Assembly: GCA_002269645.1 (NCBI GenBank)
Contig: NIVC01002264.1
Span: 78,278 to 142,277 of the forward strand
Direction of reading: 5' to 3'
DNA: 64,000 bases
Source of the DNA: Macrostomum lignano
Taxonomy: Eukaryota
Shown: positions 6,801-47,900 of the stretch, piece after piece
Layout: each line of letters starts with the position of its first letter
Numbering within the stretch: position 1 is the first letter of the stretch
Translations under genes and position numbers: made by a program
Notes under the pieces: generated by a model
What the model was told of the DNA's origin: nothing
What the model saw: only the letters and a program-made list of their open reading frames with translations
Databases searched by the model: none

Positions 6801-9800
6801 ACGTCCTCTGGGCTGCTGTTGAATACTGTCTGCGCGAAATGTTTTGCTATGTTGCTTATAATAGGAGTAAAATTGGTCGCTTTTTCTACGAATACCGATA
6901 GGGGCATCACCAAACTGGCTCCCGTGACGCTAAATCGATCCCCTCATAGAGCGCCACATAGGGAACCCAAAACTACTCATGAGATGTTAAAGTGCTCATA
7001 AAAGCTAAAACTACTCACGAAAAGTTTCAACTGCTCATGAGAAGCTAAAACTGCTCATGAGAAGCTAAAACTGCTCATGAAAAGCTAAAACTGCTCATGA
7101 GAAGCTAAAACTGCTCATGAGAAGCTAAAACTGCTCATGAAAAGCTAAAACTGCTCATGAGAAGCTAAAACTGCTCATGAGAAGCTAAAACTGCTCATGA
7201 GAAGCTAAAAACTGCTCATGAGAAGCTAAAAACTGCTCATGAGAAGCTAAAAACTGCTCATGAGAAGCTAAAAACTGCTCATGAGAAGCTAAAAACTGCT
7301 CATGAGAAGCTAAAAACTGCTCATGAGAAGCTAAAAACTGCTCATGAGAAGCTAAAAACTGCTCATGAGAAGCTAAAAACTGCTCATGAGAAGCTAAAAA
7401 CTCTCATGAGAAGCTAAAAACTGCTCATGAGAAGCTAAAAACTGCTCATGAGAAGCTAAAAACTGCTCATGAGAAGCTAAAAACTGCTCATGAGAAGCTA
7501 AAATCTACTCATGAATCTAAAACTGCTCATGAGAGAAGCTGAAACTGCTCATGAGAGAAGCTGAAACTGCTCATGAGAGAAGCTGAAACTGCTCATGAGA
7601 GAAGCTGAAACTGCTCATGAGAGAAGCTGAAACTGCTCATGAGAGAAGTTAAAATCAGCTTATGAAAAGCTAAAACTGTTCCTGGGAACCAAATCTGCTC
7701 ATATGAAGCTAAAAACTGCTCATATGAAGCTAAAAAAACTGCTCATATGATGATCCAAATCTGCTCATGGAGAGCTAAAGACATTCTTAAGTAGCCGTAG
7801 CCAGATTCACTTTAACATATATCTATGACTACCCGACCAAGGGCCCAAAAAAGATGAAATTAAATATGAAATACAGACAGGCACACAGATTGACAAATCA
7901 AGCTAACCTGCAACCAGGCAGACGGTACAAAAGCGTGACAATCAACTCGTTGAAGCAGCGGCAGCACCCGGCTAGCCAGCCTGCCCAGGAAGTCCCGATG
8001 CCGACGCTCGCGTCTAGCAACTGCGCTGGCCAGGCGAGCCCGGGCAACGTTCTCAGCGTTAACCAGCTCGGCCAGTTTGTCCGGCACCGCGGCCAGATTA
8101 GGATTAGCCTTGTGCGCTTCGAATACGCTGCGCTTCTCGTACACTAGAATGTAGGCATTCTGCGACAGATGCCAGTCTTTCCCGGGCACAGCGGCCGAGG
8201 CTTTCTCAGTTGGCCGGCTGGCCGAGTACCCCATCGACTGCTCCAGCTTCTCTTCTTGTCGCTTTAATAGCTTGTGCTTCACTGGGTACACCTGGCTATC
8301 GTTGCACACCAGCCAGCCCCGGCTGTAGTCCCGAACTATGGCCACGTAGTGACCGCCTGTGGCCTGCGTGTGTTCAATATAACAGTGCAGTTATTGCTAT
8401 TGGAAGGCTGGATGGAATAAGCTAGATAGGATTTACTCGCTTCAACATAATCCACAGAGACAGGATTAACTCGCCCCCATTATAATCTACCGACAGGATT
8501 AACACCCCACCATAATCTACAGACAGGATTAACACCCCACCATAATCTACAGACAGGATTAACACCCCCACTATAATCTACAGACAGGATTAACACCCCC
8601 ATCATAATCTACAGACAGGATTAACACCCCACCATAATCTACAGACAGGATTAACACCCCACCATAATCTACAGACAGGATTAACACCCCCACCATAATC
8701 TACAGAGAGGATTAACACCCCACCATAATCTACAGACAGGATTAACACGCCCACCATAATCCACAAAGACAGGGTTAACACCCCACCATAATCCACAAAG
8801 ACAGGATTAACACCCCACCATAATCTACAGAGACAGGATTAACTCGCCCCATCAGAAGCTACAGAGACAGGATTAACTCGCCCCATCATAAGCTACAGAG
8901 ACAGGATTAACACTCCACCATAAGCTACAGAGACAGGATTAACACTCCACCATAAGCTACAGAGACAGGATTAACACTCCACCATAAGCTACAGAGACAG
9001 GATTAACTCGCCCCATCAGAAGCTACAGAGACAGGATTAACTCGCCCCATCAGAAGCTACAGAGACAGGATTAACTCGCCCCATCAGAAGCTACAGAGAC
9101 AGGATTAACTCGCCCCATCAGAAGCTACAGAGACAGGATTAACTCGCCCCATCATAAGCTACAGAGACAGGATTAACTCGCCCCATCATAAGCTACAGAG
9201 ACAGGATTAACTCGCCCTATCATAAGCTACAGAGACAGGATTAACTCGCCCTATCATAAGCTACAGAGACAGGATTAACTCGCCCCATCATAAGCTACAG
9301 AGACAGGATTAACTCGCCCCATCATAAGCTACAGAGACAGGATTAACTCGCCCTATCATAAGCTACAGAGACAGGATTAACTCGCCCCATCATAAGCTAC
9401 AGAGACAGGATTAACTCGCCCCATCATAAGCTACAGAGACAGGATTAACTCGCCCTATCATAAGCTACAGAGACAGGATTAACTCGCCCCATCATAAGCT
9501 ACAGAGACAGGATTAACTCGCCCCATCATAAGCTACAGAGACAGGATTAACTCGCCCTATCATAAGCTACAGAGACAGGATTAACTCGCCCTATCATAAG
9601 CTACAGAGACAGGATTAACTCGCCCCATCATAAGCTACAGAGACAGGATTAACTCGCCCCATCAGAAGCTACAGAGACAGGATTAACTCGCCCCATCATA
9701 AGCTACAGAGACAGGATTAACTCGCCCCATCATAAGCTACAGAGACAGGATTAACTCGCCCCATCATAAGCTACAGAGACAGGATTAACACTCCACCATA

Positions 9801-12800: not shown

Positions 12801-14873
12801 ATTAACACTCCACCATAAGCTACAGAGACAGGATTAACTCGCCCCATCATAAGCTACAGAGACAGGATTAACTCGCCCCACCATAATCTACAGACAGGAT
12901 TAACTCGCTCCATCATATCTAAAATAGCAAAACAAGCATAATTTAGTTACCTGAGGTCCAATATGAATGAGCACAGCCTTGAGCACGTAGGGCTCAGCTC
13001 CAGACAGGAATTCGGACATTTCAATGGTCTCAGGATAAGCAATCGGGGATTTCACTTTCTTCTTGCGCAGGGTGCGCATGTCGAAGTCAAATCGCATCAG
13101 CTGGAGGCACAGCTCGTCGGGCAGGGACACCAGTTCTACGCCTACGCTAGCGTCCCGTGGCGCCTGGCACACGGGGCAGTTGTACTGACTCTCCCCGGCC
13201 AGGTCCTGTCGGGCTAAGAACTCGCGAAGGCAGTCAGTCAGCAAAGTGCTGGTCAGGTTTAAGCAGAGCTCGTGAAAATTTGACTCGCGTTCCGACAGAT
13301 AGGTGCAGGCGTGACAGCGGGTCACGTATCTAAGGGGATGAGTAGGATGGTGGTGGCTTGTGTTGAAATTGCTGTATGAGCACATTCTTCAGAATTTATC
13401 ATTTTCAGGCACCTATAGGGGTAGTTTCTGTGGCAGATTAAAAACGGTCTGGTAGTTTCTGTGGCAGATTAAAAAAACGGTTTGGTAGTTTCTGTGGCAG
13501 ATTAAAAACGGTTTGGTAGTTTCTGTGGCAGATTAAAAACGGTCTGGTAGTTTCTGTGGCAGATTAAAAACGGTCTGGTAGTTTCTGTGGCAGATTAAAA
13601 ACGGTCTGGTAGTTTCTGTGGCAGATTAAAAACGGTTTGGTAGATTCTGTGGCAGATTCAGACAGGTGTGGGGTAGATTCTCTGGCAGATTTAGACAGGT
13701 GTGGGGTAGATTCTCTGGCAGATTTAGACAGGTGTGGGGTAGATTATCTGGCAGATTTAGACAGGTGTGGGGTAGATTTTCTGGTAGATTTAGACAGATG
13801 TGGGGTAGATTATCTGGCAGATTTAGACAGGTGTGGGGTAGATTATCTGGCAGATTTAGACAGGTGCGGGGTAGATTATCTGGCAGATTCAGACAGGTGT
13901 GGGGTAGATTCTCTGGCAGATTTAGACAGGTGTGGGGTAGATTCTCTGGCAGATTTAGACAGGTGTGGGGTAGATTATCTGGCAGATTTAGACAGGTGTG
14001 GGGTAGATTTTCTGGTAGATTTAGACAGATGTGGGGTAGATTATCTGGCAGATTTAGACAGGTGTGGGGTAGATTATCTGGCAGATTTAGACAGGTGTGG
14101 GGCAGATTCTCTGGCAGATTTAGGCTGGGAAACTTGGAGAATAGATTCTCAATACGATTTCTTTCATTGGCTCACTTGTAAGATCCAGTGTAATGCTTCA
14201 TAACATTGTCGTCAAACTCATCAAATCTTCGTTCCAACAATTGTCGGAATAGGATCCTGAACTCGCTGGCGTCCTGCTGGATGCCCTTGTCCAAATTGAG
14301 GGCCTCAATAAATGCCACGGGTTCGCAGACGCCGTCGCGTTGCAGATGCAGCCTGGCAAAGATGCTCTGCAGTTCGCGAATGATAGCGTCATCATCGGAG
14401 GGCAGCCGATAGACGGCCTGCACCAGATCCGGGCTGCGCAGGTACAACTGCAACAGCGAATTCAAATAGCACGTGTTGCCATAATTGGTGAGACCAATTG
14501 GACCGTCCGATGAGGAAACTGCGGCCGAATCATCCTGCTGACCGGTTGCGTCATCAGCGTCTGCTTCGGCGTCGCCGGGACAACAGGACGGCGGTTGCTT
14601 AGCGGCAGCGGCGGCCAGCGCCACCGGCCCGGCCATGGCGGCCAAAGACGTGGCAGCCTCGGCGGTCTCCGCAAATTTGTCCGGCCCGAGGCCGTTCAGG
14701 CAGCAGGGATTCTGGCGGCAGTTGCCGCGGCAGGCGCCCAGCGGACACGTGTCCGACAGCAGGTTGTAGGCCTTCATCAGCTGGTGCTCGGCGATGTCGC
14801 CAGGTTCGACGCTCTCAGTCCAGGACCAGCGTTCGTCAGCCTGTTTGGCGGCTTTCGACTTGGAGGTGGACAT
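861..14873 (-). CDS. USP48: Ubiquitin carboxyl-terminal hydrolase 48, 6 exons, about 1188 aa
   Basis: Exons 14873-14176, 13329-12951, 8363-7908, 6829-6401, 4080-3882 and 2266-861; all introns are GT-AG and phase-compatible (3567 nt). Exon 4080-3882 is absent from the ORF track. Motifs: USP48-type N-terminus (W.W.E.V.P...C..G.CR.NC..NP.CL.G.G), Cys box GLTNYGNTCYLNSLLQ, QQDASEF, His box GGHYVA..CND, DUSP-like CPHGRL/CQHG repeats, WVGVKSLRSWKNLA, and a C-terminal ubiquitin-like domain. Confidence 0.93.
2341..3594 (+). mobile_element. Non-autonomous Tc1/IS630-like DNA transposon (deletion derivative) in a USP48 intron
   Basis: TIRs of about 56 bp at 2341-2396 and 3539-3594 (4 mismatches). Internal ORF 2536-2763 (RQRLIDAIAQG..ARILQIKKTSAFRI..RGG..EMREFLVEKLDENPFLKIRE*) resembles a Tc1/IS630 N-terminal HTH. 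No DDE domain and no clear TA TSD. Confidence 0.7.
2881..3575. repeat. 86-bp tandem repeat, about 8 near-identical copies, inside the transposon
   Basis: Period 86; the unit includes the inner part of the right TIR. Confidence 0.97.
4170..6345. repeat. 34/37-bp minisatellite in a USP48 intron
   Basis: Unit GTGAGCTGCTGTTGCTAATCTCAAACATGGTCTTCAG plus a 34-bp variant; about 55-60 copies. Confidence 0.96.
7010..7770. repeat. 20-22-bp minisatellite in a USP48 intron
   Basis: Unit GAGAAGCTAAAA(A)CTGCTCAT. Confidence 0.96.
8455..12905. repeat. 4.4-kb minisatellite of 32/34-bp units filling USP48 intron 2
   Basis: Unit CAGAGACAGGATTAACTCGCCCCATCATAAGCTA plus a 32-bp ...AACACTCCACCATAAGCTA variant. 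Confidence 0.98.
13419..14125. repeat. Compound minisatellite in USP48 intron 1 (about 30-bp array, then 33-bp array)
   Basis: GGTAGTTTCTGTGGCAGATTAAAAACGGTCT at 13419-13650 grades into GATTTAGACAGGTGTGGGGTAGATTATCTGGCA at 13640-14125. Confidence 0.95.
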
Positions 14874-15169
14874 GGCTAGGTTAGACTGCCGAATGGCAGC
14901 GGGTTAGCATTTGTTAATTGGCTTAGTTAGACATTTTAGCTATAGATCTGCTCAGCGAATTCTGAGTGGGTAGGGCTTGGGGAGGATATTCGAGACTGCA
15001 GAAGCATCAGGCTCTTATATTCATTGTTATCATCATACCTATGCTCTTCTGCTAAGCTACACTTTGAATTGACAGTTCGCTAATAGTTATTATGCAGGCA
15101 AGAATACATAGCCACACTGAAATACATGCTTTAATTATAGGAAAACTGCTTTAGTGTAATAGTGCATGA

Positions 15170-15900: not shown

Positions 15901-17382
15901 TCAATCGTCATCTTCTTGATCGCTATCGGCCACAATTGGTGGCGCGGCCGCTGTCAAGCCTTTGCGCTGCAGGTAGCGCTCTCTGGCGCTGATCACGGCG
16001 TCTTGGTTGTTACGCCTGCGAAGCTTTACTAATAGTAGCGGATCGAGCACCGGACCTGCCGAGCCGGCTGAAGCTTTTGCTGACTTGGCTGCGCCACCCG
16101 ACGATGAGGCCGAACTTGACCTCGATCTGGACCTTCTGGACCTTCGATGCTGATGTCGGTGAGGTTGCCTACGATCCCGGTCCCGATCCCGGACCGCCGC
16201 TGATGATGATGACGAAGACTGAGGCAGCTGAGGCGGCGGCGGCTCCTCGGATTGAGGCTTGCGGCCGCGGTCAAGCAGATTGCGATAGAATCCCGTCAGG
16301 TCCTGCTGCTTTGCGGCTGCTTGCCTGCAAATTCATTCACTGAATTATTGAATGCCAGCTAAATCAGGTCACTGATAGCCTCCGCTCCCTCAGTCCCTGA
16401 ATCTGCCTCTCCGCTCCCTCAGTCCCTGAATCTGCCTCTCCGCTCCCTCAGTCCCTGAATCTGCCTCTCCGCTCTCTCAGTCCCTGAATCTGCCTCTCCG
16501 CTCCCTCAGTCCCTGAATCTGCCTCTCCGCTCCCTCAGTCCCTGAATCTGCCTCTCCGCTCCCTCAGTCCCTGAATCTGCCTCTCCGCTCCCTCAGTCCC
16601 TGAATCTGCCTCTCCGCTCCCCCAGTCCCTGAATTTGCCTCTCCACTCCCTCAGCCCCTGAATCTGCCTCTCCACTCCCTCAGCCCCTGAATCTGCCTCT
16701 CCACTGACTCAGTCAGTCCCTGAATCTGTCTCTCCACTCCATCAGTCAGTCCCTGAATCTGCCTCTCCGCTGTCCCAATCACTAAACCAGGCCAATGTGA
16801 TTACCTGGCATCCTTGGCCTCCTGCAGCTTGTGCTGCCGCTCCAATTCGGAAAACTCGGCCAATTTCTTTTTATAAGCAGATGTTACAAAGGCCTCTTTA
16901 TCGGCGTACAGTTCGCCTTCTGCCTCGCGCTCCGCTTGAATTTTCTTCTCTTTCTGATACTCGCGCTCCATCTTGCGCTCTCCAGCCGCTTGCATCAGGC
17001 CGCCAATGTACTTGGGCGCCCGGTCGCTCACAGTTTTAACAGTTTGCCGCTCGGGCTTCCGTTCAGTAATCTGATCGTAGATGGAATCGTATTCGAATAT
17101 GCTGGGGTCCTCGGCCAGGCATTTGTCTATGTCCGCCCTGGTGGAGCTCTTCAACCGGCTATTGCCCGACGCTTCTAAAGCCGCTTTTTTAGCGTCGAAT
17201 TTGGCAAATTTTGCGTCAAATTTAGCTTCGGCCTCGCCGTCTGAATCGCTGTCGTCGAATATCGACGGTCGAGACAGCTGCTGCTTCTGTTGCTGTTGTT
17301 GCTGCTGTTGCCGCTGCTTCGCCCTCTCCTCGCCCGGTATGATCAAGCCGTAAGATTTGTTTTTCTTCCCAGTCCGAGACAT
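15901..17382 (-). CDS. NSRP1: Nuclear speckle splicing regulatory protein 1 (CCDC55), 2 exons, 333 aa
   Basis: Exons 17382-16805 and 16324-15901 (phase 2, GT-AG). Motifs YGLIIP, PSIFDDSD, EDPSIFEYDSIYD, PKYIGGL, EGELYADKEAFVTSAYKKKL, QDLTGFYRNLL, an RS/RD tract and the C-terminal AVISARERYLQRK. Confidence 0.92.
16378..16775. repeat. 29-bp minisatellite in the NSRP1 intron
   Basis: Unit TCCGCTCCCTCAGTCCCTGAATCTGCCTC. Confidence 0.95.
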
Positions 17383-17694
17383 GGCAACGCTAACTGGAGT
17401 TGCAATTCGGATTTGCTAGCGAATTATCTTAGTACGAATTAGTGAGAATACACTCTACTAACAGTAGCAAAGAGGGGACAGATTGCCTTGAAAATAAACA
17501 TAAATAATAAAATAAAATAGCGAGACAACAACAAATAAGAAAAAGAAATTGAATACCAAAAAACAAGTGAGACAAAATATCTCGAACCAAAAGTAGAATT
17601 TAAATGCATTATTTATTTTCAAAAAATTGCAATAACAACTGCATCTCTGTGCTAAAACAAACTTAACAATATCGCTTGATTTCTATGTTGAATC

Positions 17695-17940
17695 GCCTGT
17701 GTCTGTCTGGTCTGCCTGTGTCTGTCCTTCAATCTGTCTCTGTCTGTCTGTCTGCCGGTCTGTCTGTTTTTCTATCTGTCTGTCTGTCTGTCTGTCCGTC
17801 AATCTGTCTCTGTCTGTCTGTCTGCCTGTCTATCTGTCTGTCTGTCTGTCTGTCCGTCAATCTGTCTCTGTCTGTCTGTCTGCCGGTCTGTCTGTTTTTC
17901 TATCTGTCTGTCTGTCTGTCTGTCCGTCAATCTGTCTCTG

Positions 17941-17988
<48 letters not shown>

Positions 17989-18037
17989 TTCTATCTGTCT
18001 GTCTGTCTGTCCCTCAATCTGTCTCTGTCTGTCTCTG

Positions 18038-18075
<38 letters not shown>
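17695..18075. repeat. Degenerate (TCTG)n microsatellite
   Basis: Direct reading; accounts for the spurious VCLS ORFs. Confidence 0.95.
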
Positions 18076-18076
<1 letters not shown>

Positions 18077-18228
18077 GGTGTGCACCCTCAGGTACTTAAT
18101 CCATCCAATTGATACGGTTTTAAATACAAAGTACACTTCGCCAGCTTACAGACAACAATTAAGCACCCGTAGATAGCACATTTAGTTTTTTTAAAATTAG
18201 GCGACTTCATAGTGCCAATATAAAAGCA

Positions 18229-21200
18229 TCAATCAGCCAGTAAATCCCGAACGTGCTCCAGCCGCATGCCGTAAAGCGACCGGAAGGCCATGCCGGGCAG
18301 CGGGCCGTCAACAGAGTCAGCATCGGCGTCGGCCTCGGCTCCTTCATTGTCCAAATATCGATCGGGCACCTCGCGAGAAGCCACCGCCCAGGCGCCGCCG
18401 GTGTCGGCCAACCGAAGCAGCAGTTTAGTGAGCGGGCCGATAGGCAGATCGGGCAGGCCGGTTACTAACCGTCTCCGCCCGCCGCTCCTACACCGATCAG
18501 CCAGCGGTAGGCGGGCGTGTCTCAGGCCGAACTGCTCGGCCCGAGCCACCGACAACCGGTTGGCAGCGTCGCCAGATGCGGTCACGCCGACAATTAGAGC
18601 GACGGAAGGCGATTGAAACGATGATGAAGACGAAGTGTTGGGTTGGAATAGCCGTTCGGCATTGGGAGCCGCGTTGGGCGAAAATGCCGATAGATAGAGT
18701 AGCCGATCGCGGCCGAATCTATAGATGGGGAATGACAGCGAAAGTTCTTGGTGTACTTTGTTAGATTCGGTTATTGCATGCTTCAAGCTTTTGGATCTGA
18801 GCTGGGGTGATCTATTGGACTGAACTGGGTGATCTATTGGACTGAGCTGGGTGATCTATTGGACTGAGCTGGGTGATCTATTGGACTGAGCTGGGTGATC
18901 TATTGGACTGAGCTGGGTGATCTATTGGACTGAGCTGAACGATCTATTGGACTGAGCTGATGTGATCTATTAGATCGAGCTGGGTGATCTATTGGACTGA
19001 GCTGGGTGATCTATTGGACTGAGCTGGGTGATCTATTGGACTGAGCTGGGTGATCTATTGGACTGAGCTGGGTGATCTATTGGACTGAGCTGGGTGATCT
19101 ATTGGACTGAGCTGAGTGATCTATTGGACTGAGCTGAGCGATCTATTGGACTGAGCTGAGCGATCTATTGGACTGAGCTGAGCGATCTATTGGACTGAGC
19201 TGGGTGATCTATTGGACTGAGCTGGGTGATCTATTGGACTGAGCTGGGTGATCTATTGGACTGAGCTGGGTGATCTATTGGACTGAGCTGGGTGATCTAT
19301 TGGACTGAGCTGGGTGATCTATTGGACTGAGCTGGGTGATCTATTGGACTGAGCTGGGTGATCTATTGGACTGAGCTGAGCGATCTATTGGACTGAGCTG
19401 AGCGATCTATTGGACTGAGCTGAGCGATCTATTGGACTGAGCTGAGCGATCTATTGGACTGAGCTGAGCGATCTATTGGACTGAGCTGAGCGATCTATTG
19501 GACTGAGCTGAGCGATCTATTGGACTGAGCTGAGCGATCTATTGGACTGAGCTGAGCGATCTATTGGACTGAGCTGAGCGATCTATTGGACTGAGCTGAG
19601 CGATCTATTGGACTGAGCTGAGCGATCTATTGGACTGAGCTGAGCGATCTATTGGACTGAGCTGAGCGATCTATTGGACTGAGCTGGGATCTATTGGACT
19701 GAGCTGGGTGATCTATTGGACTGAGCTGGGTGATCTATTGGACTGAGCTGGGATGATCTATTGGTCAGGGCTGGGATGATCTATTGGTCAGGGCTGGGAT
19801 GATCTATTAGTCAGGGCTGGGATGATCTATTAGTCAGGGCTGGGATGATCTATTAGTCAGGGCTGGGATGATCTATTAGTCAGGGCTGGGATGATCTATT
19901 GGTCAGGGCTGGGGTGATCTATTGGTCAGGGCTGGATGATCTATTGGTCAAGGCTGGGATGATCTATTAGTCAGGGCTGGGATGATCTATTGGTCAGGGC
20001 TGGGGTGATCTATTGGTCAGGGCTGGGGTGATCTATTAGTCAGGGCTGGGATGATCTATTGGTCAGGGCTGGGATGATCTATTGGTCAAGGCTGGGATGA
20101 TCTATTGGTCAGGGCTGGGATGATCTATTGGTCAGGGCTGGGATGATCTATTGGTCAAGGCTGGGATGATCTGTTGGATCAAGCTGGATGCTGATTTGAA
20201 TTACATTAAAATCATGGTCCTAATACCCTAAAAATGCAACGCATTCAATACCTGGCCACGGCTGACTCCAGACTATCAACAGAGTCCAACGGCAGCTCAT
20301 CGAAGCCCACGCCGCCAGTGGCGAGAGTAAAATACTGACGAAACACGCAGTCGGGATGCAGGCCGCAGGCGATTAGGTGAAACGGGCGATCAGCTGCATA
20401 GTTAGCTTGCAGACAGAGCAGCACCTGGCGGGCCAGATGGCGCCACTCCAGATGGCCATTGCTGTAGCCGGAGAAGTCCAATAGCAACGGCTGCCGCTCC
20501 TCCGTTGGCAGTCCAGCCTCCAGGGCCAAGCCGGCCAAGCTGCGAGCCAGCTGGATGGCCTGGCCAGGCGGTCTGGCCAGCCAATCGTCTTGGCTTTGGT
20601 GCAGCGCCAGCCGGTACAGGCCTTGGTAAGCCAGCAGCCTGTCTGCCTGGGCGATTGGGCAAGGATTGGGGACATGCGAGCTTGGGATTTTTAGCTGACA
20701 CCCTCCCACATACTCATGGCTTGCGATGTCATCCAACAAGTACCCAGATTGAGCGGGTAGCATTCTCCTAGATCCATAAGTTAAACAGTTACCAGGCCAA
20801 TTTCCTAGAGCTTTAGTGAAGTACCTGTGTACCTCAAGAATCCTCAGTTGCTGGACCACTGTCATGCTCCCAGATCCTCAGTTGCTGGACCACCCTCCCA
20901 GATCCTCAGTTGCTGAGCCGCCCTCCCAGATCCCCAGTTGCTGGGGTCACCGCCGCCCTCCCAGATCCCCAGTTGCTGGGGTCACCGCCGCCCTCCCAGA
21001 TCCTCAGTTGCTGGGCCACTGCCGCCCTCCCAGATCCCTAGTTGCAGGGCCACCCTTCCAGATCCTCAGTTGCTGAGCCGCCCTTCCAGATCCTCAGTTG
21101 CTGAGCCACCCTCCCAGATCCTCAGTTGCTGAGCCGCCCTCCCAGATCCTCAGTTGCTGAGCCGCCCTCCCAGATCCTCAGTTGCTGAGCCGCCCTCACA

Positions 21201-22074
21201 GATCCTCAGTTGCTGAGCCGCCCTCCCAGATCCTCAGTTGCTGAGCCGCCCTCCCAGATCCTCAGTTGCTGAGCCGCCCTCCCAGATCCTCAGTTGCTGG
21301 GGTCACCGCCGCCCTCCCAGATCCTCAGTTGCTGGACCACTGCTATGCTCCCAGATCCTCAGTTGCTGGACCACTGCTATGCTCCCAGATCCTCAGTTGC
21401 TGGACCACTGCTATGCTCCCAGATCCTCAGTTGCTGAGCCACCCTCCCAGATCCTCAGCTGCTGGGGTCACCGCCACACTCCCAGATCCTCAGTTGCTGG
21501 GCCACTGCCGCCCTCTTAGATCCCCAGTTGCAGGGCCGCCCTCCCAGATCCTCAGTTGCTGGGCCACAGCCGCCCTCCCAGATCTGCATCACAGCAGCAT
21601 CACACAGCAGCGGCTTACAGGATCAGGAAACCGAGCCAGGTGCAGCAGCTCCTCGGAAGTCAGCGGTCCAGACGGCAGGCAGACGGCAAACGCAGTGGAG
21701 CTCAGCAGCAGCCGCTCAGCCTGCAGCCCAGCCACATCGCCAGGCGCCAACAGCCGGTGGACAAGCGCATCAGCTGGCGTGGAATCATCGAGCAGGTCGC
21801 CAGCCGACCCGCCGCGAGCTGTCAGCGGGTGCATGCAGGCGATCAGGTCGTCAGGCTGACAATGGACCAGGCTACTGAGTGCCCAGTCGCGCAGCCGATC
21901 AACGCCGCGCAGTGTCGACCGCTGCGGGCGAGAGCGGAAACGGCCGGATGAGCTGGCAGAAGCAGAGGATGAGCGGCCAGTGGCTATCTTTGTTGAATAG
22001 GCCGCCGCCGTTACAGCCGCTGTCACTGCAGCTGCATTTCCAATGCTGCTGTAACAGCGGCAGAGAGAGAGCGA
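18229..22074 (-). CDS. TRMT10C: tRNA methyltransferase 10C / mitochondrial RNase P protein 1-like (SPOUT), 3 exons, no genomic ATG
   Basis: Exons 22074-21619, about 20850-20252 (acceptor uncertain; alternative start 20832) and 18718-18229; phases are compatible. Motifs match TRM10C: PLTSEELL, QPLLLDF..ARQVLLC..N..RPFHLIACGL, DRLLYLSAFSPN, A.A...LRHARLPL, LLLRLADTGGAWAVASREVP. The N-terminus is S/A/R-rich like a transit peptide. Confidence 0.75.
18800..20185. repeat. 22/23-bp minisatellite in TRMT10C intron 2
   Basis: GATCTATTGGACTGAGCTGGGT changes to GATGATCTATTGGTCAGGGCTGG at about 19750. Confidence 0.96.
20830..21590. repeat. 28-37-bp minisatellite in TRMT10C intron 1
   Basis: Core CCTCCCAGATCCTCAGTTGCTG; the same family occurs at 53190-54250. 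Confidence 0.95.
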
Positions 22075-22476
22075 CTGGAAAGCAGAGATAATTACAATTA
22101 TTAGCTATTAGAAGAAAAACAACTCAAAATAGGACCATTATACGAGATAATGAAATCAAGACAAGACAAGAGACGTCTTAACTGATTTTCAAAAAATTTC
22201 CACTGTTAGATCAGAATACACTGTAGACATAGTCAATCAAGATGACCTTTTTGGTAAAAATTCAGAACTAAAATTTGAAACAAGGGAGTACTCTTAGATG
22301 CCCTATCAAAAAACATTAGGACTTATAAGACATCGAAAGAATTATTATTTAGGAGATAATATTTATGCCAAAAATTTCTAGGCCTAGTTTAAAAAGGTCT
22401 TCATAGAATGATTTGAATGGATTTTTAAATGGAGTCAATATAATCTTAATACTAAAAGTCAAGTGAAGCTCAATAT

Positions 22477-25225: not shown

Positions 25226-26720
25226 CTGACTGAAGGTGCCAAATCCATCGAAATCCTCTTTGTAAAACAGAGACCCACCAAAATCCTCTTTGCAAAACAG
25301 AGACCCACCAAAATCCTCTTTGCAAAACAGAAATCCTTTCCATAAAAATGGACTCAATCAAAATTTTTTTCTGACAAAAGAACTCAACTCTTAGGGTTCA
25401 ATGGTTAGGGTTAGGGTAAGAGCTGCACAGAGCTGCCTACATGTTAAAAGGCCCCAATAAGTAAAAATGGAACCAATTGAATCAATTGACTGTGCAACTT
25501 ATTCCTCAGTCAGTCAGTATCAGTCTCAGTTAAAGTTAACAAAATGATTGCATAATTTAAATCAACCATCCAATACACAGTGACCAACCCCTCTCCAATA
25601 TACAGCAACAAGTAAAAGTTGAACCCCTCCAACTTTGTCTCTGACCTATTGCAAAAATAAGTACAATCTTTGCAGAAAGTTAATAGTATGGAATCATTTT
25701 TTAAATGCTATGCTTTTAGTTTTAATATTTAAAGCAAGAAACTTATATCCCTGAACTCAGCTTTGCAAGCTCTTTTTAGCTCTTTCTCAAAGTTTAAAAC
25801 TTGAAGAACAGTTAGCATTTGAAATTTCCCAATTTTCTGACTGCTTTTCTGAGAGGCTTGCAAGTTTGTTGATTGAATTTAACTTGCCCAGCTAATATAA
25901 AGGCCAATAATAAAACCAATTGAATCTTGACACTGTCCTATCTATTTGTTTACATTGTATATTGCTATCTACACTTAGCCCAAGCCCAACCCACCCATTC
26001 TGGGAGAATCAATAAATTAACTGCATCCCTAACATGCGGGGGCTTTATTTCCAGTGAACGCAAAAAATGTGCACCCATCCCCCCCCAATATAAAGGACCT
26101 GCGATGAGATAAAGAGGGTTTTTTTTATAAACTGGCTACAGCCCCAAGCAGTGTGGCCAAAGAAGGTTATTAGGGGTTAAAAAAAGCAGTTTTCTGCTAT
26201 GTTTTGATGCTGACTTGCTAGTATTGTAGGAGTTCACTTGCAACATACAGACAGACAAACATCGCGTCAGTTTTAGTATATACAGAGACAATATTTAGAT
26301 ATATTGTTAAAAACATGTTAATAAATATATATGAATGTTTAAATTAAAAAATTAATTACTTAATTAAAAAATTAAAATCACCAAATCATCATTTATAATA
26401 AAATCATCATTTTATTTAAAATCAAATTATAAATAATAATTTTTTTTATAAATTTTATACAATCTTTTTATTTTATATAATCTTTTTATTTAAATAATAA
26501 ATAAATAAATAAATAAAAAGTAAGTAAAAAAATATTTTTTTATTAAAACATTTATGTATTTTTTATTAACATAAATATAAGTGCTATATATTTTAATAAA
26601 AAAAGTTATACATACAAATAAAAAAATTGAAAATTTCAAAAATATATAGCACTTTTAACATACTTTGCCATTTGTAGCATATTTGCACTTTTTAAGTAGA
26701 AAATTTCTTTAGCTTTGATA

Positions 26721-29689
26721 CTAGCAATCTTCGCCCCCCGTTGGGGGACATCTGTATAGAATCTCTGTTCTCTACAAGTAATAAGAAAATAGCCAAATAA
26801 AGCTTTCACAAAGAAAACAGACAAACTACTCAAATGAAGTGCAATGCAAAAAGAAATCATCCCAAGACAGCAAGCATCCCCCAGATAGCAAGCATCCCCC
26901 AGATTGCAAGCATCCCCCAGATAGCAAGCATCCCCCAGATTGCAAGCATCCCCCAGATAGCAAGCATCCCCAGATAGCAAGCATCACCCAAATAGCAAGC
27001 ATCCCCAGATAGCAAGCATCCCCCAGATAGCAAGCATTACCCAAATAGCAAGCATCCCCCGGATAGCAAGCATCCCCAGATAGCAAGCATCACCCAAATA
27101 GCAAGCATCCCCAGATAGCAAGCATCCCCCAGATAGCAAGCATCACCCAAATAGCAAGCATCCCCAGATAGCAAGCATCACCCAAATAGCAAGCATCCCC
27201 AGATAGCAAGCATCCCCTAGATAGCAAGCATCACCCAAATAGCAAGCATCCCCAGATAGCAAGCATCCCCCAGATAGCAAGCATCCCCCACATAGCAAGC
27301 ATCCCCAAGATACAAGCTAGCAAGCATCCCCTAGATAGATAGCATCCCCAAAAAGCAAGCATCCACCAGACAATAAGTAGCTAGTGCGACGATTTCCTTA
27401 GCATTATAGTGGCTCCTTTAAAATTCGCTCACTTTTATGTTTGAAATTGTGTATCTTTTATGTTTGACGTGGTGGCTCTTTTATGTTTGAAATGAAGTGA
27501 CTTATATGTTTGACATGGTGAATATTTTAAATGTTTTACAGGTTGGCTCTTTAATTTTCAACATGGTGGCTCTTTTATGTTCGACATAGTGGCTCCTTTA
27601 TGTTCGACATGGTGGCTCCTTTATGTTCGACATGGTGGCTCTTTTATATTAGACATGGTGGCTCTTTTATGTTCTACATGGTGGCTCTTTTATGTTCAAC
27701 ATGGTGGCTCCTTTATGTTCGACATGGTGGCTCTTTTATATTAGACATGGTGGCTCTTTAATTTTCAACATGGTGGCTCTTTTATGTTCTACATGGTGGC
27801 TCCTTTATGTTCGACATGGTGGCTCTTTTATATTAGACATGGTGGCTCTTTAATGTTCTACATGGTGGCTCTTTTATGTTCGACATGGTGGCTCTTTTAT
27901 GTTTGAAATAAAGTCTCTTATATGTTCGACATGGTGGCTCTTTAATGTTCAACACAATGGCACTTTAATGTTTGATATGGTGGCTCTTTAATGTTTGACA
28001 TGGTAGCTCTTTAATGTTCAACATGGTGGCTCCTTTATGTTCGACATGGTGGCTCTTTTATATTAGACATGGTGGCTCTTTAATGTTCTACATGGTGGCT
28101 CTTTTATGTTCGACATGGTGGTTCTTTTATGTTCGACATGGTGGCTCTTTTATGTTTGAAATAAAGTCTTATATGTTTGACATGGTGGCTCCTTAATGTT
28201 CTACATGGTGGCTCTTTAATGTTAGACATGGAGTCACATATGCTTTACATGGTGGTTCTTTTATGTTTGACACGGTGGCTCTTTAATGTTCGACATGGTG
28301 GCTCTTTAATATTCCACATGGTGGCTGTTCTATGTTTGACATGGTGGCTCTTTTATGTTTGACATGGTGGCTCTTTAATGTTCGCCATGGTGGCTCTTCT
28401 ATGTTTGATATGGGGGCTCTTTAATTTTTGACATGGTGGCTCCTTAATGTTCCACATGGTGGCTCTTTAATGTTGGACATGGAGTCATTTATGCTTGACA
28501 TGGTGGCTCTTCTATGTTCGACATGGTGGCTATTTTATGTTTAAAGTGATAGCTCTTAAATTTTTGGCCATGGAGTCACGTATATGTTTGACATGGAGTC
28601 ACTTATATGTTTGACATGGTGGTCCTTCTATGTTTGAAATGGTGGCTCTTTAATGTTTGATATGGTGGCTCCTTAATTTTAGACATGGTGGCTCTTCTAT
28701 GTTTCACATGGTGGTTCTTCTATGTTTGATATGGTGGCTCTTTAATGTTCGACATGGTGGCTCTTTAATGTTTGGCATGGTGGCTCTTTAATGTTTGGCA
28801 TGGTGGCTCTTTTATGTTCGACATGGTGGCTCTAATGTTTGACATGGTGACTCTTTAATGTTTGACATGGTGGCTCTTTAATGTTTGACATGGTGGCTCT
28901 TTAACATTTGGCATGGTGGCTCTAATGTTTGACATGGTGGCTCTTTATGTTTGGCATGGTGCTGCTTTTATGTTTGACATGGTGGCTCTTAAATGTTTGA
29001 CATGGTGGCTCTTTAATGTTTGGCATGGTGGCTCTTTAATGTTCGACATGGTGGCTCTTTAATGTTCGACATGGTGGCTCTTCTATGTTTGACATTGCGC
29101 TTCTTTTATGTTTAGCATTTTGTGTTTTTAAGGTGTTTTAATAAAAAATTTTGCACTACTAAGATTCGAACCCAGGTTGCCACATTAGCAGTCAGTCTGC
29201 TCGCATCTAGGCTATCTGTTTTTAATTTGAGAACATGAATTGTGGCCCTTATAATTCAATACTTACAGCAAGTCAATTGGAGTAAAAAGTTATGACATAA
29301 TCAATTTCTCAGTCAGCCAGTATCAGTTTCAATTTAAGTTGGCAATATGGTTACGCAATTTCATTCAAGTCGTGTGTGCATTTCTTTGGCACTGTTTTCA
29401 ACTTGTTGTGATGCAATCTTTATCACAATTGGAATTCAGCCAGTCAGTTTTTTCTCTAGCATTCTTACAATGCATTCTAGGTCAAAAGAGCTGCTTGACC
29501 TTTGCAAAAAAGCATGTTTTTCGAATATTTAATCCCTTTAAAATTGAGCAATTTCTTAGCCAAGATGCATGTACCGTCCCAGGAAAATTTCTGATCGAAT
29601 GGTGCAAGTTTGAAGAAAATTGGTTGAGCCGTTTTTTCTGAAATCTATCTCACACATACACACAGACATTTCATTTTTAGTATATAGGA
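26721..29689 (-). mobile_element. Non-autonomous Helitron, copy 1
   Basis: Minus strand: A|TCCTATATACTAAAAATGAAATG... to ...TCCCCC-AAC-GGGGGGCGAAGATTGCTAG|T. It has 5' TC, a 3' hairpin plus CTAG, an A|T target and no TSD. Internal arrays of 17-18 bp (26865-27370) and 21-23 bp (27465-29100). Confidence 0.8.
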
Positions 29690-29694
29690 TATAG

Positions 29695-32212
29695 CTAGCA
29701 ATCTTCGCCCCCCGATGGGGGACATCTGGATAGAATCTCTGTTCTCTACAAGTAACAAAAAGACAGCCAAAAATCCTTCAAAAAGACAACAAACAAACTG
29801 CTCAAATGAAGTGCATTGCAAAAAGAAATCATCCCAAGACCACAAGCATCCCCCAGATAGCAAGCATCCCCAAGATAGCAAGCATCCCCCAGATAGCAAG
29901 CATCCCCCAGATAGCAAGCATCCCCAAGATAGCAAGCATCCCCCAGATAGCAAGCATCCCCAAGATAGCAAGCATCCCCCAGATAGCAAGCGTCCCCCAG
30001 ATAGCAAGCATCCCCCAGATAGCAAGCATCCCCCAGATAGCAAGCATCCCCCAGATTGCAAGCATCCCCCAGATAGCAAGCATCCCCCGGATAGCAAGCA
30101 TCCCCCAGAAAGCAAGCATCCCCCAGATAGATAGCATCCCAAAGATAGCAAGCATCCCCCAGATAGCAAGCATCCCCAAGATAGCAAGCATCCCCCAGAT
30201 AGCAAGCGTCCCCCAGATAGCAAGCATCCCCCAGATAGCAAGCATCCCCCAGATAGCAAGCATCCCCCAGATTGCAAGCATCCCCCAGATAGCAAGCATC
30301 CCCCAGATAGCAAGCATCCCCCAGATAGCAGGCATCCCCTAGATAGCAAGCATCCCCCAGATAGCAAGCATCCCCCAGATAGCAAGCATCCCCCAAGATA
30401 GCAAGCATCCCCCAGATAGCAGGCATCCCCAAGATAGCAAGCATCCCCCAGATAGCAAGCATCCCCAAGATAGATAGCATCCCCAAGATAGCAAGCATCC
30501 CCCAGATAGCAAGCATCCCCAAGATAGATAGCATCCCCAAATAGTAAGCATCCACCAGACAATAAGTAGCTAGTGCGACAATTTCCTTAGCATTATAGCG
30601 GCTCCTTTAAAATTCGCTTACTTTTACGTTTGAAATTGTGTATCTTTTATGTTTAACAGGGTGGCTCTTTTATGTTATACATTGTGGCTCTTTTATGTTA
30701 TACATTGTGGCTCTTTAATGTTCGACATGGTCGCTCTTTAATGTTCGACATGGTGGCTCTTTTATGTTCAACATGGTGTCGCTTCAATGTTTGACATGGA
30801 GTTACGTATATGTTTTACATGGTGGCTCTTTTATGTTCGACATGGCGTCATGTATATGTTTGACATGGTAGCTCTTGAATGTTCAACATGGAGTCATGTA
30901 TATGTTTGACATGGTGGCTCTTTAATGGTCGACATGGTGGCTCTTTAATGTTTGACATAGTGTCTCTTTAATGTTTGACATGGAGTCATGTAGATGTTTG
31001 CCATGGTGGCTCTTTTATGTTTTGCATGGTGGCTCTTTTATGTTCGACATGGCGTCTCTTCAATGTTTGACATGGAGTCATGTATATGTTTGACATGGTG
31101 GCTCTTGTATTTTTAACATGTTGGCTCTTTAATGTTCGACATGGTGGCTCTTCAATGTTTGACATGGAGTCATGTATATGTTTGACCTGGTTGCTCTTTA
31201 ATGTTTGACATGGTGGCTCTTTAATGTTCGACATGGTGGCTCTTTTAGGTTTGAAATGGTGGCTCTTTAATGTTTGACATGGTGGCTTTTTAATGTTCGA
31301 CATGGTGGCTCTTTTATGTTCGACATGGCGTCATGTATATGTTTGACATGGTAGCTCTTGAATGTTCAACATGGAGTCATGTATATGTTGGACATGGTGG
31401 CTCTTTAATGTTCGACATGGTGGCTCTTTAATGTTCGACATGGTGGCTCTTTAATGGTCGACATGGTTGCTCTTTAATGTTCGACATGGTGGCTCTTTAA
31501 TGTTCGACATGGTGACTCTTTAATGGTCGACATGGTGGCTCTTTAATGGTCGACATGGTGGCTCTTTAATGTTTGACATGGTGGCTCTTTAATGTTTGAC
31601 ATTTTGCTTTCTTGTGTTTAGCATTTTGTGTTTTTAAGGTTTTTGAATAAAAAATCTTTTTGCACTACTAAGATTCGAACCCAGGTCGCAGCATTAGCAG
31701 TCCAGTCTGTTCGCATCTATGCTATCTCTTGTCAATTGGAGTACATGAATTGTGGCCCTTATAATTCAATTCTTATAGCAAATCGGTTAGAGTAAAAAGT
31801 TATGACATAATCAATTTCTCAGTCAGCCAGTATCAGTGTCAATTTAAGTTAGCAATATTGGTTACGCAATTTAAATCAAGTTTTGTGTGCATTTGTTTGG
31901 CACTGTTTTCAACTGGTTGTGATGTAATCTTTATCACAATTGGAATTCAGTCAGTCAGTTTTTTCTCTAGCATTCTTACAATGCATTTCAGGTCGAAAGA
32001 GCTGCTTGACCTTTGCAAAAAAGCATGTTTTTCGAATATTTAATCCCTTTAATATTGAGCAATTTCTTAGCCAAGATGCATGTACCGTCCCAGGAAAAGT
32101 TTTGATCAAATGGTGCAAGTTTGAAGAAAATCGGTTGAGCCATTTTTTCTGAAATCTATCGCATACCTACCTACCTACCTACCCACAGACAACTCATTTT
32201 TAGTATATAGGA
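29695..32212 (-). mobile_element. Non-autonomous Helitron, copy 2 (head-to-tail with copy 1)
   Basis: Same termini (A|TCCTATATACTAAAAATG at 32212; hairpin plus CTAG at 29695-29698) and the same internal order, with arrays at 29840-30560 and 30650-31605. Separated from copy 1 by 5 bp. Confidence 0.8.
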
Positions 32213-38330: not shown

Positions 38331-38585
38331 TTTCAATAAGTTTTCACTATCGTTTTTGGCTGTTCTGAAAAATAAAAAACTGAAGAAATCTCATATTCTG
38401 GTCAGTTCGCTACACAGAGCGAAAGCGAAAAACCAAATCGTTTTATTTATTCCATTTTTTGCATTGATAATATCCAACAGCCGAATTTAGATTAACAGTA
38501 AACAGTATCGATTGTTTATGCAAATCTCATTCTACTCTGTTCACGCGTGATTGTTTAAATTTATATTTGTTTGCTTTCCTTGTGT

Positions 38586-39945
<1,360 letters not shown>

Positions 39946-47750: not shown

Positions 47751-47900
47751 GCACACTCGCTTAAAATGAAGCCCTAAACGACTCTGTCAAACCCTGATTT
47801 TACGTTGCCAAGATTCTGTCCTTGGTTCGAACCCCGCTTTGGTTCACGCCCCAACTGTCTCAAAAGTTAATACCTGGTAGTTCCACAGACCAGAAGCAGC

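What the first reader, a model, noticed from the sequence alone, without database searches (positions are those of the whole stretch)
21990..22110. TRMT10C has no genomic start codon; the AUG may come in trans from the spliced leader
Seen: exon 1 starts at a strong acceptor (tctctgctttccag|, base 22074). The frame reads SLSLCRCYSSIGNAAAVTAAVTAAAYSTKIATGRSSSASASSSGRFRSRPQRSTLRG, with no acidic residue for about 55 aa, as in a mitochondrial transit peptide. There is no in-frame ATG from the stop at 22107 until deep in the protein (about 21833), and I found no upstream exon in the mostly transposon-derived 18 kb. Established: flatworm spliced leaders end in AUG, which can initiate translation. 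Inference: SL-AUG joined in phase 0 gives M-SLSLCRCYSS..., so mitochondrial import of this mt-RNase P subunit would depend on trans-splicing.
Basis: partly seen in the sequence, partly recalled or inferred. Interest (0 to 1): 0.82.

Follow-up and report, generated by a model that had tools for sequence, protein, structure and literature searches.

The report
Start codon probably supplied by spliced leader
In this flatworm (Macrostomum lignano) scaffold, a gene for a mitochondrial tRNA-processing protein has no start codon of its own and most likely borrows one from the trans-spliced leader RNA, which is a known flatworm trick; a sister copy in the same assembly has ATG at that exact spot, and this assembly was polished with RNA-seq reads.

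Summary
On the minus strand, a TTCCAG acceptor (AG 22076-22075) opens a GC-rich exon at 22074. The frame is closed by TAG at 22107-22105 and has no ATG until 21834 (codon 81). The first 59 codons have no acidic residue.

The window is Macrostomum lignano, the last 64 kb of scaffold NIVC01002264.1 of assembly Mlig_3_7. The gene is a divergent TRMT10C/MRPP1-type methyltransferase. The species' single spliced leader (SL) ends in ATG, and joined at 22074 it is in frame. The public gene model is 5'-partial, with no start codon and no upstream exon.

New finding: a second scaffold of the same assembly (NIVC01003696.1) is nearly identical here but reads ATG where the window reads CAG. It is the only adjacent double substitution in about 16.6 kb aligned.

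Mlig_3_7 was polished with RNA-seq reads. The two changed bases are exactly where the SL tail (CATG) differs from the genome (CCAG). I therefore read that ATG as an imprint of SL-junction reads, which is indirect transcript support. A real ATG-bearing paralog cannot be excluded, and no reads could be examined.

This is a new example of a known mechanism, of moderate interest.

The parts
22075..22080 (-). Proposed SL trans-splice acceptor TTCCAG (AG at 22076-22075). It is preceded by the pyrimidine run tatctctgctttc and by CTAAT branch-point-like motifs 25-35 nt upstream.
   Evidence: It matches the [T/C]TNCAG motif reported for M. lignano SL acceptors. Bases 22077-22076 (CA) are AT in the sister scaffold.
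21619..22074 (-). Exon 1 of the TRMT10C-type gene: 152 codons in phase 0, followed by the donor CCT|gtaagc. It has no in-frame ATG before 21834.
   Evidence: It is the only open frame and has the best codon-usage score of the three frames (-1.1 against -14.5 and -23.9).
21898..22074 (-). Presequence-like N-terminal region, the first 59 codons: no D/E, 8 R/K, and 69% A/S/T/L/R.
   Evidence: This is composition only; no targeting predictor was available.
22105..22107 (-). In-frame TAG that closes the frame upstream. Its AG is also a possible alternative acceptor (ttcttctaatag|CTAATAATTG, exon start 22104) that would likewise put the SL-AUG in frame.
22049..22050 (-). AG of the rival acceptor ctgttacag|CAGCATTGG (exon start 22048). 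Here the SL-AUG would be out of frame and would open a 50-codon ORF.
   Evidence: The 26 nt between the two acceptors contain no A except in TTACAG. This site therefore has no branch point of its own and is the second AG downstream of any branch point.
21856..21857 (-). AG of the internal in-frame acceptor candidate ccattgtcag|CCTGACGAC (exon start 21855). UniProt models A0A1I8JGX6 and A0A1I8HEB3 start at this point (PDDLIAC...).
21832..21834 (-). First in-frame genomic ATG (codon 81). A protein starting here has acidic residues from position 13 and lacks the presequence-like part.
20252..20646 (-). Exon 2 (acceptor cgcccag|GCAGAC, donor CCAG|gtattg).
18229..18718 (-). Exon 3, including the TGA stop. 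It holds the C-terminal half of the TRM10-type SPOUT domain.
20647..21618 (-). Intron 1, mostly a 28-nt tandem repeat (20867-21565).
18719..20251 (-). Intron 2, mostly a 22-nt tandem repeat (18791-20178).
15901..17395 (-). Downstream NSRP1-like gene. It has two SL-type acceptors (ctccag|TTAGCG, exon start 17393; ttag|CGTTGCC, exon start 17389) and its own ATG at 17382. It forms an operon-like context with the TRMT10C-type gene.
   Evidence: The annotated 5'-partial CDS starts fit transcript starts exactly after these AGs.
14873..14887 (-). SL-type acceptor of the next gene (USP-like): ggcag|TCTAACCTAGCCATG, exon start 14885. Here the SL-AUG is in frame with the genomic ATG 12 nt downstream.

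Best explanation
The gene copy in this window is a divergent TRMT10C/MRPP1-type tRNA methyltransferase gene of Macrostomum lignano. It is the first gene of an operon-like cluster with NSRP1-like and USP-like genes.

- Proposed mechanism: the pre-mRNA is SL trans-spliced at the TTCCAG acceptor (AG 22076-22075). The 35-nt leader ends in AUG, and joined to 22074 that AUG is in phase 0. Translation would then begin M-SLSLCRCYSS... and yield a 447-aa protein, with a roughly 60-residue non-acidic, presequence-like N-terminus followed by a TRM10-type SPOUT domain.
- The sister scaffold's ATG: it sits at the same three bases in NIVC01003696.1. It is most likely not genomic, but an imprint of SL-junction RNA-seq reads written in when Mlig_3_7 was polished with Pilon using STAR-mapped RNA-seq.
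- Shown: the sequence features, the frame, the family, the SL sequence, the 5'-partial public model, the CAG/ATG difference and the polishing method.
- Inferred: that trans-splicing occurs at this AG, that the SL-AUG is the initiator, that the N-terminus is a mitochondrial presequence, and that the sister ATG is an artefact.
For: 1. **Species and leader.** UniRef and NCBI name the hits as M. lignano. The SL is CGGTCTCTTACTGCGAAGACTCAATTTATTGCATG, and 30-39% of genes are trans-spliced.
2. **Acceptor.** It fits the published YTNCAG motif, lies at the AT-to-GC boundary and is in frame.
3. **Rival acceptor is weaker.** The out-of-frame AG 26 nt downstream has no adenosine available for its own branch point. 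By the first-AG scanning rule (my own knowledge of 3' splice-site choice), 22075 is preferred. The other plausible upstream AG (22105) is also in frame.
4. **No alternative start.** There is no in-frame ATG for 80 codons and no exon-like block upstream for about 18 kb.
5. **Public model.** PAA50197.1 is 5'-partial, begins 8 codons inside this exon and has no upstream exon.
6. **Sister scaffold.** NIVC01003696.1 reads cATG|TCGCTC where the window reads cCAG|TCGCTC. This is the only adjacent double substitution among about 12 substitutions in about 16.6 kb aligned, and there is no other substitution within 1.6 kb upstream or 0.9 kb downstream.
7. **Match to the SL tail.** The two changed bases are exactly the two positions where the last four SL bases (CATG) differ from the genome (CCAG).
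9. **Same assembly.** The window is itself part of that assembly, 100.000% identical to NIVC01002264.1 over 22,391 nt. The gene is annotated only on the ATG scaffold although both encode the same protein. RNA evidence was therefore assigned to that copy.
10. **Family.** The only distant relatives carry PF01746. A profile built with them hits human TRMT10C at 6e-99, against about 1e-35 for Trm10/TRMT10A. The best Foldseek hits are MRPP1 chains.
11. **N-terminus.** It has no acidic residue in the first 59 positions, whereas the internal-Met or 21855 starts are acidic from the outset.
12. **Operon context.** Neighbours with exact AG-defined transcript starts lie 0.85 and about 1 kb downstream. 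Ustyantsev & Berezikov report that 82% of operons start with a trans-spliced gene.
Against: - No SL-junction read, cDNA or Ribo-seq data could be examined. The protein collection holds no transcript-derived version of this protein, and a metagenome scan for an exon-1 40-mer found nothing.
- The annotated transcript start (window 22052-22050) follows no AG, so the published pipeline did not place an SL-defined boundary at 22074. It did place such boundaries for the two downstream genes.
- Those two downstream SL sites, one with the same CCAG context, show no ATG imprint in any copy.
- A simple end-to-end mapping model would also tend to change position -5 (T to G), and that did not happen. The imprint model therefore needs a tight mismatch limit or short SL overhangs.
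- The two scaffolds are real, distinct copies, 90-95% identical outside a 22-kb near-identical block. A true paralog difference is therefore possible.
- The coding signal of the first 80 codons is weak, and the structure model has low confidence there.
- Older models start at 21855, just after another in-frame AG.
Confidence: 0.6

Rival explanations
1. The ATG on NIVC01003696.1 is real DNA. One paralogous copy then has an ordinary genomic start codon. The window copy has lost it through a two-base change and is either a decaying duplicate or a copy rescued by trans-splicing. In that case 'TRMT10C has no genomic start codon' does not hold for the species.
For: - The two scaffolds are distinct genomic copies, 90-95% identical outside the shared block.
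- M. lignano DV1 is a hidden polyploid with a redundant assembly.
- Other real-looking single-base differences exist between the copies, including a non-synonymous one in the NSRP1-like gene.
- Two other SL sites show no RNA imprint.
- The annotation did not put an SL boundary at 22074.
Against: - An adjacent double substitution is unique in about 16.6 kb with only about 12 substitutions. It falls exactly on the three bases before the ORF, and it turns a start codon into a consensus SL acceptor or the reverse. By chance this is roughly a 1e-5 event.
- The change coincides base for base with what SL-junction reads would write, in an assembly known to be RNA-polished.
- Neither the NCBI model on that very scaffold nor the older UniProt models use this ATG.
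Confidence: 0.2
2. The real mRNA 5' end lies further downstream, and the open frame upstream of it is outron or untranslated sequence.

- Option 1: trans-splicing at 22048, where the SL-AUG is out of frame and acts as a short upstream ORF, with the protein starting at Met81 (21834).
- Option 2: trans-splicing at 21855, where the SL-AUG is in frame and gives M-PDDLIAC...

Either way the product would lack the presequence-like part.
For: - 22048 also fits YTNCAG and has the stronger pyrimidine tract.
- The annotated transcript begins only 2-4 nt upstream of it.
- Four UniProt models start exactly after the AG at 21857-21856.
- The coding signal of codons 1-80 is weak.
Against: - The NCBI protein starts SSIGN, so its transcript includes bases upstream of 22048.
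- 22048 has no branch-point A of its own and is the second AG.
- A TRMT10C-type enzyme needs a mitochondrial presequence, and both shorter N-termini are acidic.
- With the long start, the part N-terminal to the methyltransferase domain is about 200 aa. That is close to human TRMT10C, whose methyltransferase domain starts near residue 185-190.
- The ATG on the sister scaffold points to 22074, not to these sites.
Confidence: 0.12
3. The gene is not trans-spliced at its 5' end. Instead, either a capped transcript starts upstream and translation begins at a near-cognate codon, or an undetected short upstream exon supplies an ATG.
For: - In-frame near-cognates exist: ATT 22098 (A at -3, G at +4), ATT 22044, GTG 22026 and ACG 22011.
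- The annotation shows a ragged 5' end that is not defined by an AG.
Against: - No upstream exon appears in the public model, and there is no exon-like block for about 18 kb.
- Near-cognate starts are inefficient.
- This reading does not explain the CAG/ATG coincidence.
Confidence: 0.05

Closest known systems
[quoted passage not shown]
   Same: The SL ends in AUG. The acceptor sits directly in front of an open frame that lacks its own ATG. The SL-AUG is in phase with no intervening stop.
   Different: Usage is inferred here, not shown. The species is a free-living macrostomid rather than Schistosoma. The borrowed AUG would head a mitochondrial presequence. A sister copy carries ATG at the same three bases.
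TRMT10C / MRPP1, the methyltransferase subunit of animal mitochondrial RNase P (PDB 5nfj, 7onu, 8cbk)
   Same: It has a TRM10-type SPOUT fold (TM 0.85 and rmsd 2.9 A to 5nfj_B). The nearest sequence relatives are TRMT10C-type. It has a long helical N-terminal part preceded by a non-acidic leader, and a similar overall length.
   Different: It is very divergent: 21-23% identity to human, no direct Pfam hit, and phmmer E = 0.05 to PDB chains. The N-terminal domain is modelled at low confidence. Partners (MRPP2, PRORP) and activity are untested.
SL trans-spliced operons of M. lignano (Wudarski et al. 2017; Ustyantsev & Berezikov 2021)
   Same: Three same-strand genes have short repeat-adjusted spacers. 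The two downstream genes have transcript starts exactly after AG. An older gene model (A0A1I8F1M7) fuses all three genes.
   Different: Trans-splicing of the first gene is not recorded in the deposited annotation. Its upstream neighbour on the same strand is about 18 kb away.

Membership tests
SL-AUG-initiated flatworm mRNA (slORF) | The species has an SL RNA whose leader ends in AUG. | tested here: met
   The M. lignano SL ends ...TTGCATG (PMC8629364). All reported flatworm SLs end in ATG (PMC12582326).
SL-AUG-initiated flatworm mRNA (slORF) | [quoted passage not shown] | tested here: inconclusive
   The sequence fits the YTNCAG motif, with a pyrimidine tract and branch-point-like CTAAT. No upstream exon appears in the public model. 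Actual use of the site could not be read from transcripts.
SL-AUG-initiated flatworm mRNA (slORF) | The SL-AUG is in frame with the ORF and no stop lies between them. | tested here: met
   ATG+TCG CTC... is phase 0 and continues through the spliced 447-codon ORF.
SL-AUG-initiated flatworm mRNA (slORF) | There is no genomic in-frame AUG at the head of the ORF. | tested here: inconclusive
   Met in this scaffold: the stop is at 22107 and the first ATG is at 21834. Not met in the sister scaffold NIVC01003696.1, which reads ATG at the matching three bases. Whether that ATG is DNA or an RNA-polishing imprint is unresolved.
SL-AUG-initiated flatworm mRNA (slORF) | SL-junction reads or cDNA exist at the site, and translation from the SL-AUG is shown. 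| not testable with these tools
   No RNA-seq, cDNA, Ribo-seq or proteomic data were reachable.
TRMT10C / MRPP1 | TRM10-type SPOUT methyltransferase domain. | tested here: met
   There is no direct Pfam hit. However, all six distant relatives carry PF01746, the profile hits the TRM10 family, and the AF2 model of residues 190-400 superposes on 5nfj_B with TM 0.85. UniProt names it 'SAM-dependent MTase TRM10-type domain'.
TRMT10C / MRPP1 | Closer to TRMT10C than to TRMT10A/B or Trm10. | tested here: met
   phmmer against PDB returns only TRMT10C chains (E = 0.05-0.27). The eight best Foldseek hits are all TRMT10C. The profile of its nearest relatives scores 6e-99 on TRMT10C against about 1e-35 on Trm10/TRMT10A. 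The margin for the M. lignano protein itself is small.
TRMT10C / MRPP1 | N-terminal mitochondrial targeting sequence. | tested here: inconclusive
   Composition fits: 0 D/E, 8 R/K and 69% A/S/T/L/R in 58 residues. No targeting predictor or localisation data were available.
TRMT10C / MRPP1 | Works with MRPP2 (HSD17B10) and PRORP on mitochondrial pre-tRNAs. | not testable with these tools
   This needs biochemistry.

The most novel reading that the evidence does not exclude
The CAG/ATG difference is real DNA. In two near-identical paralogous copies within one polyploid genome, the same three bases would then be a genomic start codon in one copy and an SL acceptor in the other, with the acceptor importing the start codon. 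That would be a snapshot of a gene 'outsourcing' its initiator codon to the spliced leader, or taking it back. A viable path exists through AAG, which is already an acceptor.
Probability: 0.15. Interest if true: 0.75.

Novelty: new member of a known kind. Interest (0 to 1): 0.4.

Why it matters
- **Biology.** If confirmed, mitochondrial import of an mt-RNase P/m1R9 methyltransferase subunit in M. lignano would depend on trans-splicing. The choice of trans-splice site (22074 against 21855 or 22048) could then decide whether a targeted protein is made at all.
- **Annotation.** Gene models in SL-using flatworms that are labelled '5'-partial' may in fact be complete once the SL-AUG is added.
- **Reference genome.** Mlig_3_7 is still the reference in use. 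It may carry SL-derived ATGs written over real CAG acceptors by RNA-seq polishing, which would create spurious genomic start codons and erase acceptor sites. That claim can be tested genome-wide with existing data.

Tried and rejected
- **My first exon-2 acceptor** (tgtcag|CTAAAAATC) was wrong. The annotated junction is FPDP|ADRLL, with exon 2 starting at 20646.
- **The window as a different, non-RNA-polished assembly.** I assumed this for a long time. It is rejected: the window is the last 64 kb of NIVC01002264.1 of Mlig_3_7.
- **A 3-nt 'ATG retained' offset in annotated starts.** This is rejected, because the NSRP1-like and USP-like starts fit exact AG boundaries (and my own indexing).
- **L002 (NIVC01001425.1) as a third exon-1 copy.** It is not one. 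It is two contigs joined head to head across an N gap, and both end in intron 1 or at the exon-1 donor.
- **A second RNA imprint.** None was found at the NSRP1-like, USP-like, Rab43-like or calmodulin-like 5' ends.
- **SL RNA gene in the window.** None was found.
- **Gene IDs in papers and supplements.** No hits. Wasik et al. 2015 is not held.
- **A newer M. lignano assembly.** None was found; the originating lab still used Mlig_3_7 in late 2025.
Full report
**1. What is in the sequence**

The gene lies on the minus strand. The sequence reads ...taattgtaattatctctgctttccag|TCGCTCTCTCTCTGCCGCTGTTACAGCAGCATTGG..., with the AG at 22076-22075 and the first exon base at 22074.

- The frame that continues into the rest of the gene reads SLSLCRCYSSIGNAAAVTAAV....
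- It is closed upstream by TAG at 22107-22105.
- Its first ATG is at 21834-21832, which is codon 81.
- With a Met added, the first 58 residues hold 8 R/K and no D/E. The first acidic residue is at position 60.
- GC content jumps from about 0.34 upstream to about 0.60 at this point.
- Between 22100 and about 40000 I found only AT-rich sequence and tandem arrays. Nothing there looks like an exon.

**2. Organism, gene and source of the window**

A homolog search returned only Macrostomum lignano entries.

- Exon structure: exons 22074-21619, 20646-20252 and 18718-18229 encode exactly NCBI PAA50197.1 (BOX15_Mlig034004g1, labelled 'partial') plus 8 extra N-terminal codons.
- Family, sequence evidence: the protein has no direct Pfam hit and only weak PDB sequence hits, all to TRMT10C (E = 0.05).
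- Family, wider search: a full HMMER scan of 1.84 billion representatives found six distant relatives, and all carry PF01746. A profile built with them hits human TRMT10C at 6e-99, against about 1e-35 for Trm10/TRMT10A.
- Family, structure evidence: the AlphaFold model has pLDDT 70-90 in the domain at residues 190-400 and low confidence elsewhere. It matches MRPP1 chains best (5nfj_B TM 0.85, rmsd 2.9 A).

'TRMT10C-type' is therefore supported, though the protein is very divergent.

The window itself is the last 64 kb of scaffold NIVC01002264.1 of assembly Mlig_3_7 (GCA_002269645.1). Locus L003 from that scaffold is 100.000% identical to window 60291-37901 with no gaps. The coordinate offset puts window base 64000 at the scaffold's end.

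**3. The leader**

M. lignano has one reported 35-nt SL, CGGTCTCTTACTGCGAAGACTCAATTTATTGCATG. Between 30% and 39% of genes are trans-spliced, and the top motif at SL acceptors is [T/C]TNCAG. That flatworm SLs end in AUG, and that this AUG can start translation, is established (Cheng et al. 2006, as cited).

**4. Candidate acceptors**

| Exon start | Context | Fits YTNCAG | SL-AUG frame |
|---|---|---|---|
| 22104 | ttcttctaatag\| | no | in frame |
| 22074 | ctttccag\| | yes | in frame |
| 22048 | ctgttacag\| | yes | out of frame (50-codon ORF) |
| 21855 | ccattgtcag\| | no | in frame |

- The 26 nt between 22074 and 22048 contain no A apart from TTACAG. The 22048 site therefore has no branch point of its own and is the second AG after any upstream branch point. 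By the usual first-AG rule (my own knowledge) this favours 22074.
- Both AGs that are well placed, at 22105 and 22075, put the SL-AUG in frame.

**5. Public models**

The table returned by the look-up of encoding contigs gives CDS ranges.

- For the two downstream genes, the 5'-partial CDS starts fit transcript starts exactly after AG: ctccag|TTAGCG, ttag|CGTTGCC and ggcag|TCTAACC. SL-defined boundaries are thus present in the deposited annotation.
- For the TRMT10C-type gene, the protein starts SSIGN. Its transcript start therefore lies at window 22052-22050, which follows no AG.
- This 5' end is therefore ragged and not SL-defined. It still has no ATG and no upstream exon.
- Older UniProt models from the earlier assembly start at PDDLIAC, right after the AG at 21857-21856. 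This is a lead for an internal site and not proof of one.

**6. The key new fact**

Scaffold NIVC01003696.1 (L001) is colinear with the window and 99.2-99.9% identical over window 37.5-15.3 kb. At the three bases that are CAG in the window (22077-22075) it reads ATG: ctgctttcATGtcgctc.

- That ATG is in frame and would give the same M-SLSLCRC... protein.
- Across about 16.6 kb of aligned unique sequence there are about 12 single substitutions and some indels. This is the only adjacent double substitution.
- The nearest other substitution is 1.6 kb away.
- Outside the shared block the two scaffolds are only 84-95% identical, so they are distinct copies.
- The third scaffold with this gene (L002) lacks exon 1, because its contigs end there.

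**7. Reading the ATG**

The Mlig_3_7 paper states that the Canu assembly 'was polished with Pilon v. [quoted passage not shown] It also states that STAR was run with --alignEndsType EndToEnd for the transcriptome assembly.

- A read that starts a few bases inside the SL and continues into exon 1 would be forced onto the genome. The last four SL bases (CATG) differ from the genome (CCAG) at exactly the two positions that differ between the scaffolds.
- The gene is annotated only on the ATG scaffold, although both scaffolds encode the same protein. RNA evidence was therefore assigned to that copy.
- I judge that the ATG is most likely an imprint of SL-junction reads. It would then be second-hand evidence that the SL is joined at this very base.

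Points against this reading:
- Two other SL sites nearby show no such change, and one of them has the same CCAG context.
- Position -5 (T against G in the SL) was not changed, which needs a tight mismatch limit or short overhangs.
- The annotation pipeline did not mark 22074 as an SL site.
- How Pilon weights multi-mapped DNA reads against RNA reads is from my memory only, and I do not rely on it.

The alternative, a true paralog difference, needs a dinucleotide change that lands on these exact bases and interconverts a start codon and a consensus acceptor. By chance that is roughly 1e-5, given the observed divergence. Selection could raise the odds but cannot be assessed here.

**8. Function**

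- N-terminus: with the long start, the part N-terminal to the methyltransferase domain is about 200 aa, led by a non-acidic, A/S/T/R-rich stretch. The methyltransferase domain of human TRMT10C starts near residue 185-190. That human TRMT10C carries an N-terminal presequence is my own knowledge.
- Shorter starts: starts at Met81 or at 21855 are acidic from the outset.
- Coding signal: codon usage in the first 80 codons is best in this frame, but weakly so (-1.1 against -14.5 and -23.9).
- Operon context: the TRMT10C-type stop (18229) is 0.85 kb from the NSRP1-like SL acceptors, and 377 nt of that spacer is a (GACA)n array. The USP-like acceptor follows about 1 kb further downstream.
- Fused model: one old gene model (A0A1I8F1M7) fuses all three genes.
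- Published rate: 82% of operons start with a trans-spliced gene.

**9. Verdict**

- The blanket statement 'no genomic start codon' holds only for this scaffold.
- The mechanism is a known one in flatworms, so this is a new member of a known kind.
- The most useful by-product is a concrete, testable suspicion that RNA-seq polishing wrote SL-derived ATGs into the reference assembly.

Noticed in passing
window 1-64000: The window equals NIVC01002264.1:78278-142277, the scaffold's last 64 kb, of M. lignano assembly Mlig_3_7. Identity to the sister scaffold NIVC01003696.1 is mosaic: 99.2-99.9% over window 37.5-15.3 kb, but 84-95% on both sides. This suggests recent gene conversion between homeologous copies, or a consensus built from shared reads.
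   Followed up: partly
window ~34700 (minus strand); L001 2736-2746: The last 11 nt of the SL (TTTATTGCATG) occur once, with 22/35 ungapped identity to the whole SL. They are followed by CCATGGCATGGGCATGGGC and not by GTAAG, so this is not an SL RNA gene. It may be a relic of a retroposed trans-spliced mRNA, or chance (about 0.01 expected).
   Followed up: no
window 14873-14887 (minus strand): At the USP-like gene's SL-type acceptor (ggcag|TCT AAC CTA GCC ATG), the SL-AUG is in frame with the genomic ATG four codons downstream. Trans-splicing would therefore add M-S-N-L-A to the N-terminus unless the ribosome skips the SL-AUG.
   Followed up: no
window 15901-18229 and UniProt A0A1I8F1M7 (P0002): An older gene model fuses TRMT10C exon 3, the NSRP1-like gene and the start of the USP-like gene into one protein. 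This fits a polycistronic precursor across the three genes.
   Followed up: partly
L002 (NIVC01001425.1) 7680-9118: This scaffold joins two contigs head to head across a run of N. Both arms carry TRMT10C exons 2-3, the NSRP1-like gene and the USP-like gene. One arm ends 2 nt into exon 1, at the donor. It looks like a scaffolding artefact or an unresolved inverted duplication.
   Followed up: partly
window 26720-32212: A 5.5-kb block of 18-nt and 23-nt tandem arrays is present in the window but absent from the otherwise near-identical sister scaffold.
   Followed up: no
window 15992 and 17065 (minus strand): Two exonic single-base differences in the NSRP1-like gene separate the two scaffolds. 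One is non-synonymous (Ser in NIVC01003696.1, Ile in the window) and one is synonymous.
   Followed up: no
window 17700-18076 and 38583-39943: Long (TGTC/GACA)n arrays give spurious ORFs of up to 400 aa in several frames on both strands.
   Followed up: no
window 43800-50300 (minus strand): A Rab43-like GTPase (exons 49980-50291 and 47901-48296; identical to BOX15_Mlig015024g1, present on three scaffolds) and a calmodulin-like EF-hand gene (ATG near 44420). Both have ordinary genomic ATGs. A coiled-coil gene lies on the plus strand at 56.5-62.6 kb.
   Followed up: partly
The homolog search with the NSRP1-like first exon returned nothing at E <= 1e-40, although P0002 shares about 115 identical residues with it. 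I cannot explain this; the glutamine-rich, low-complexity N-terminus may have limited word matching.
   Followed up: no
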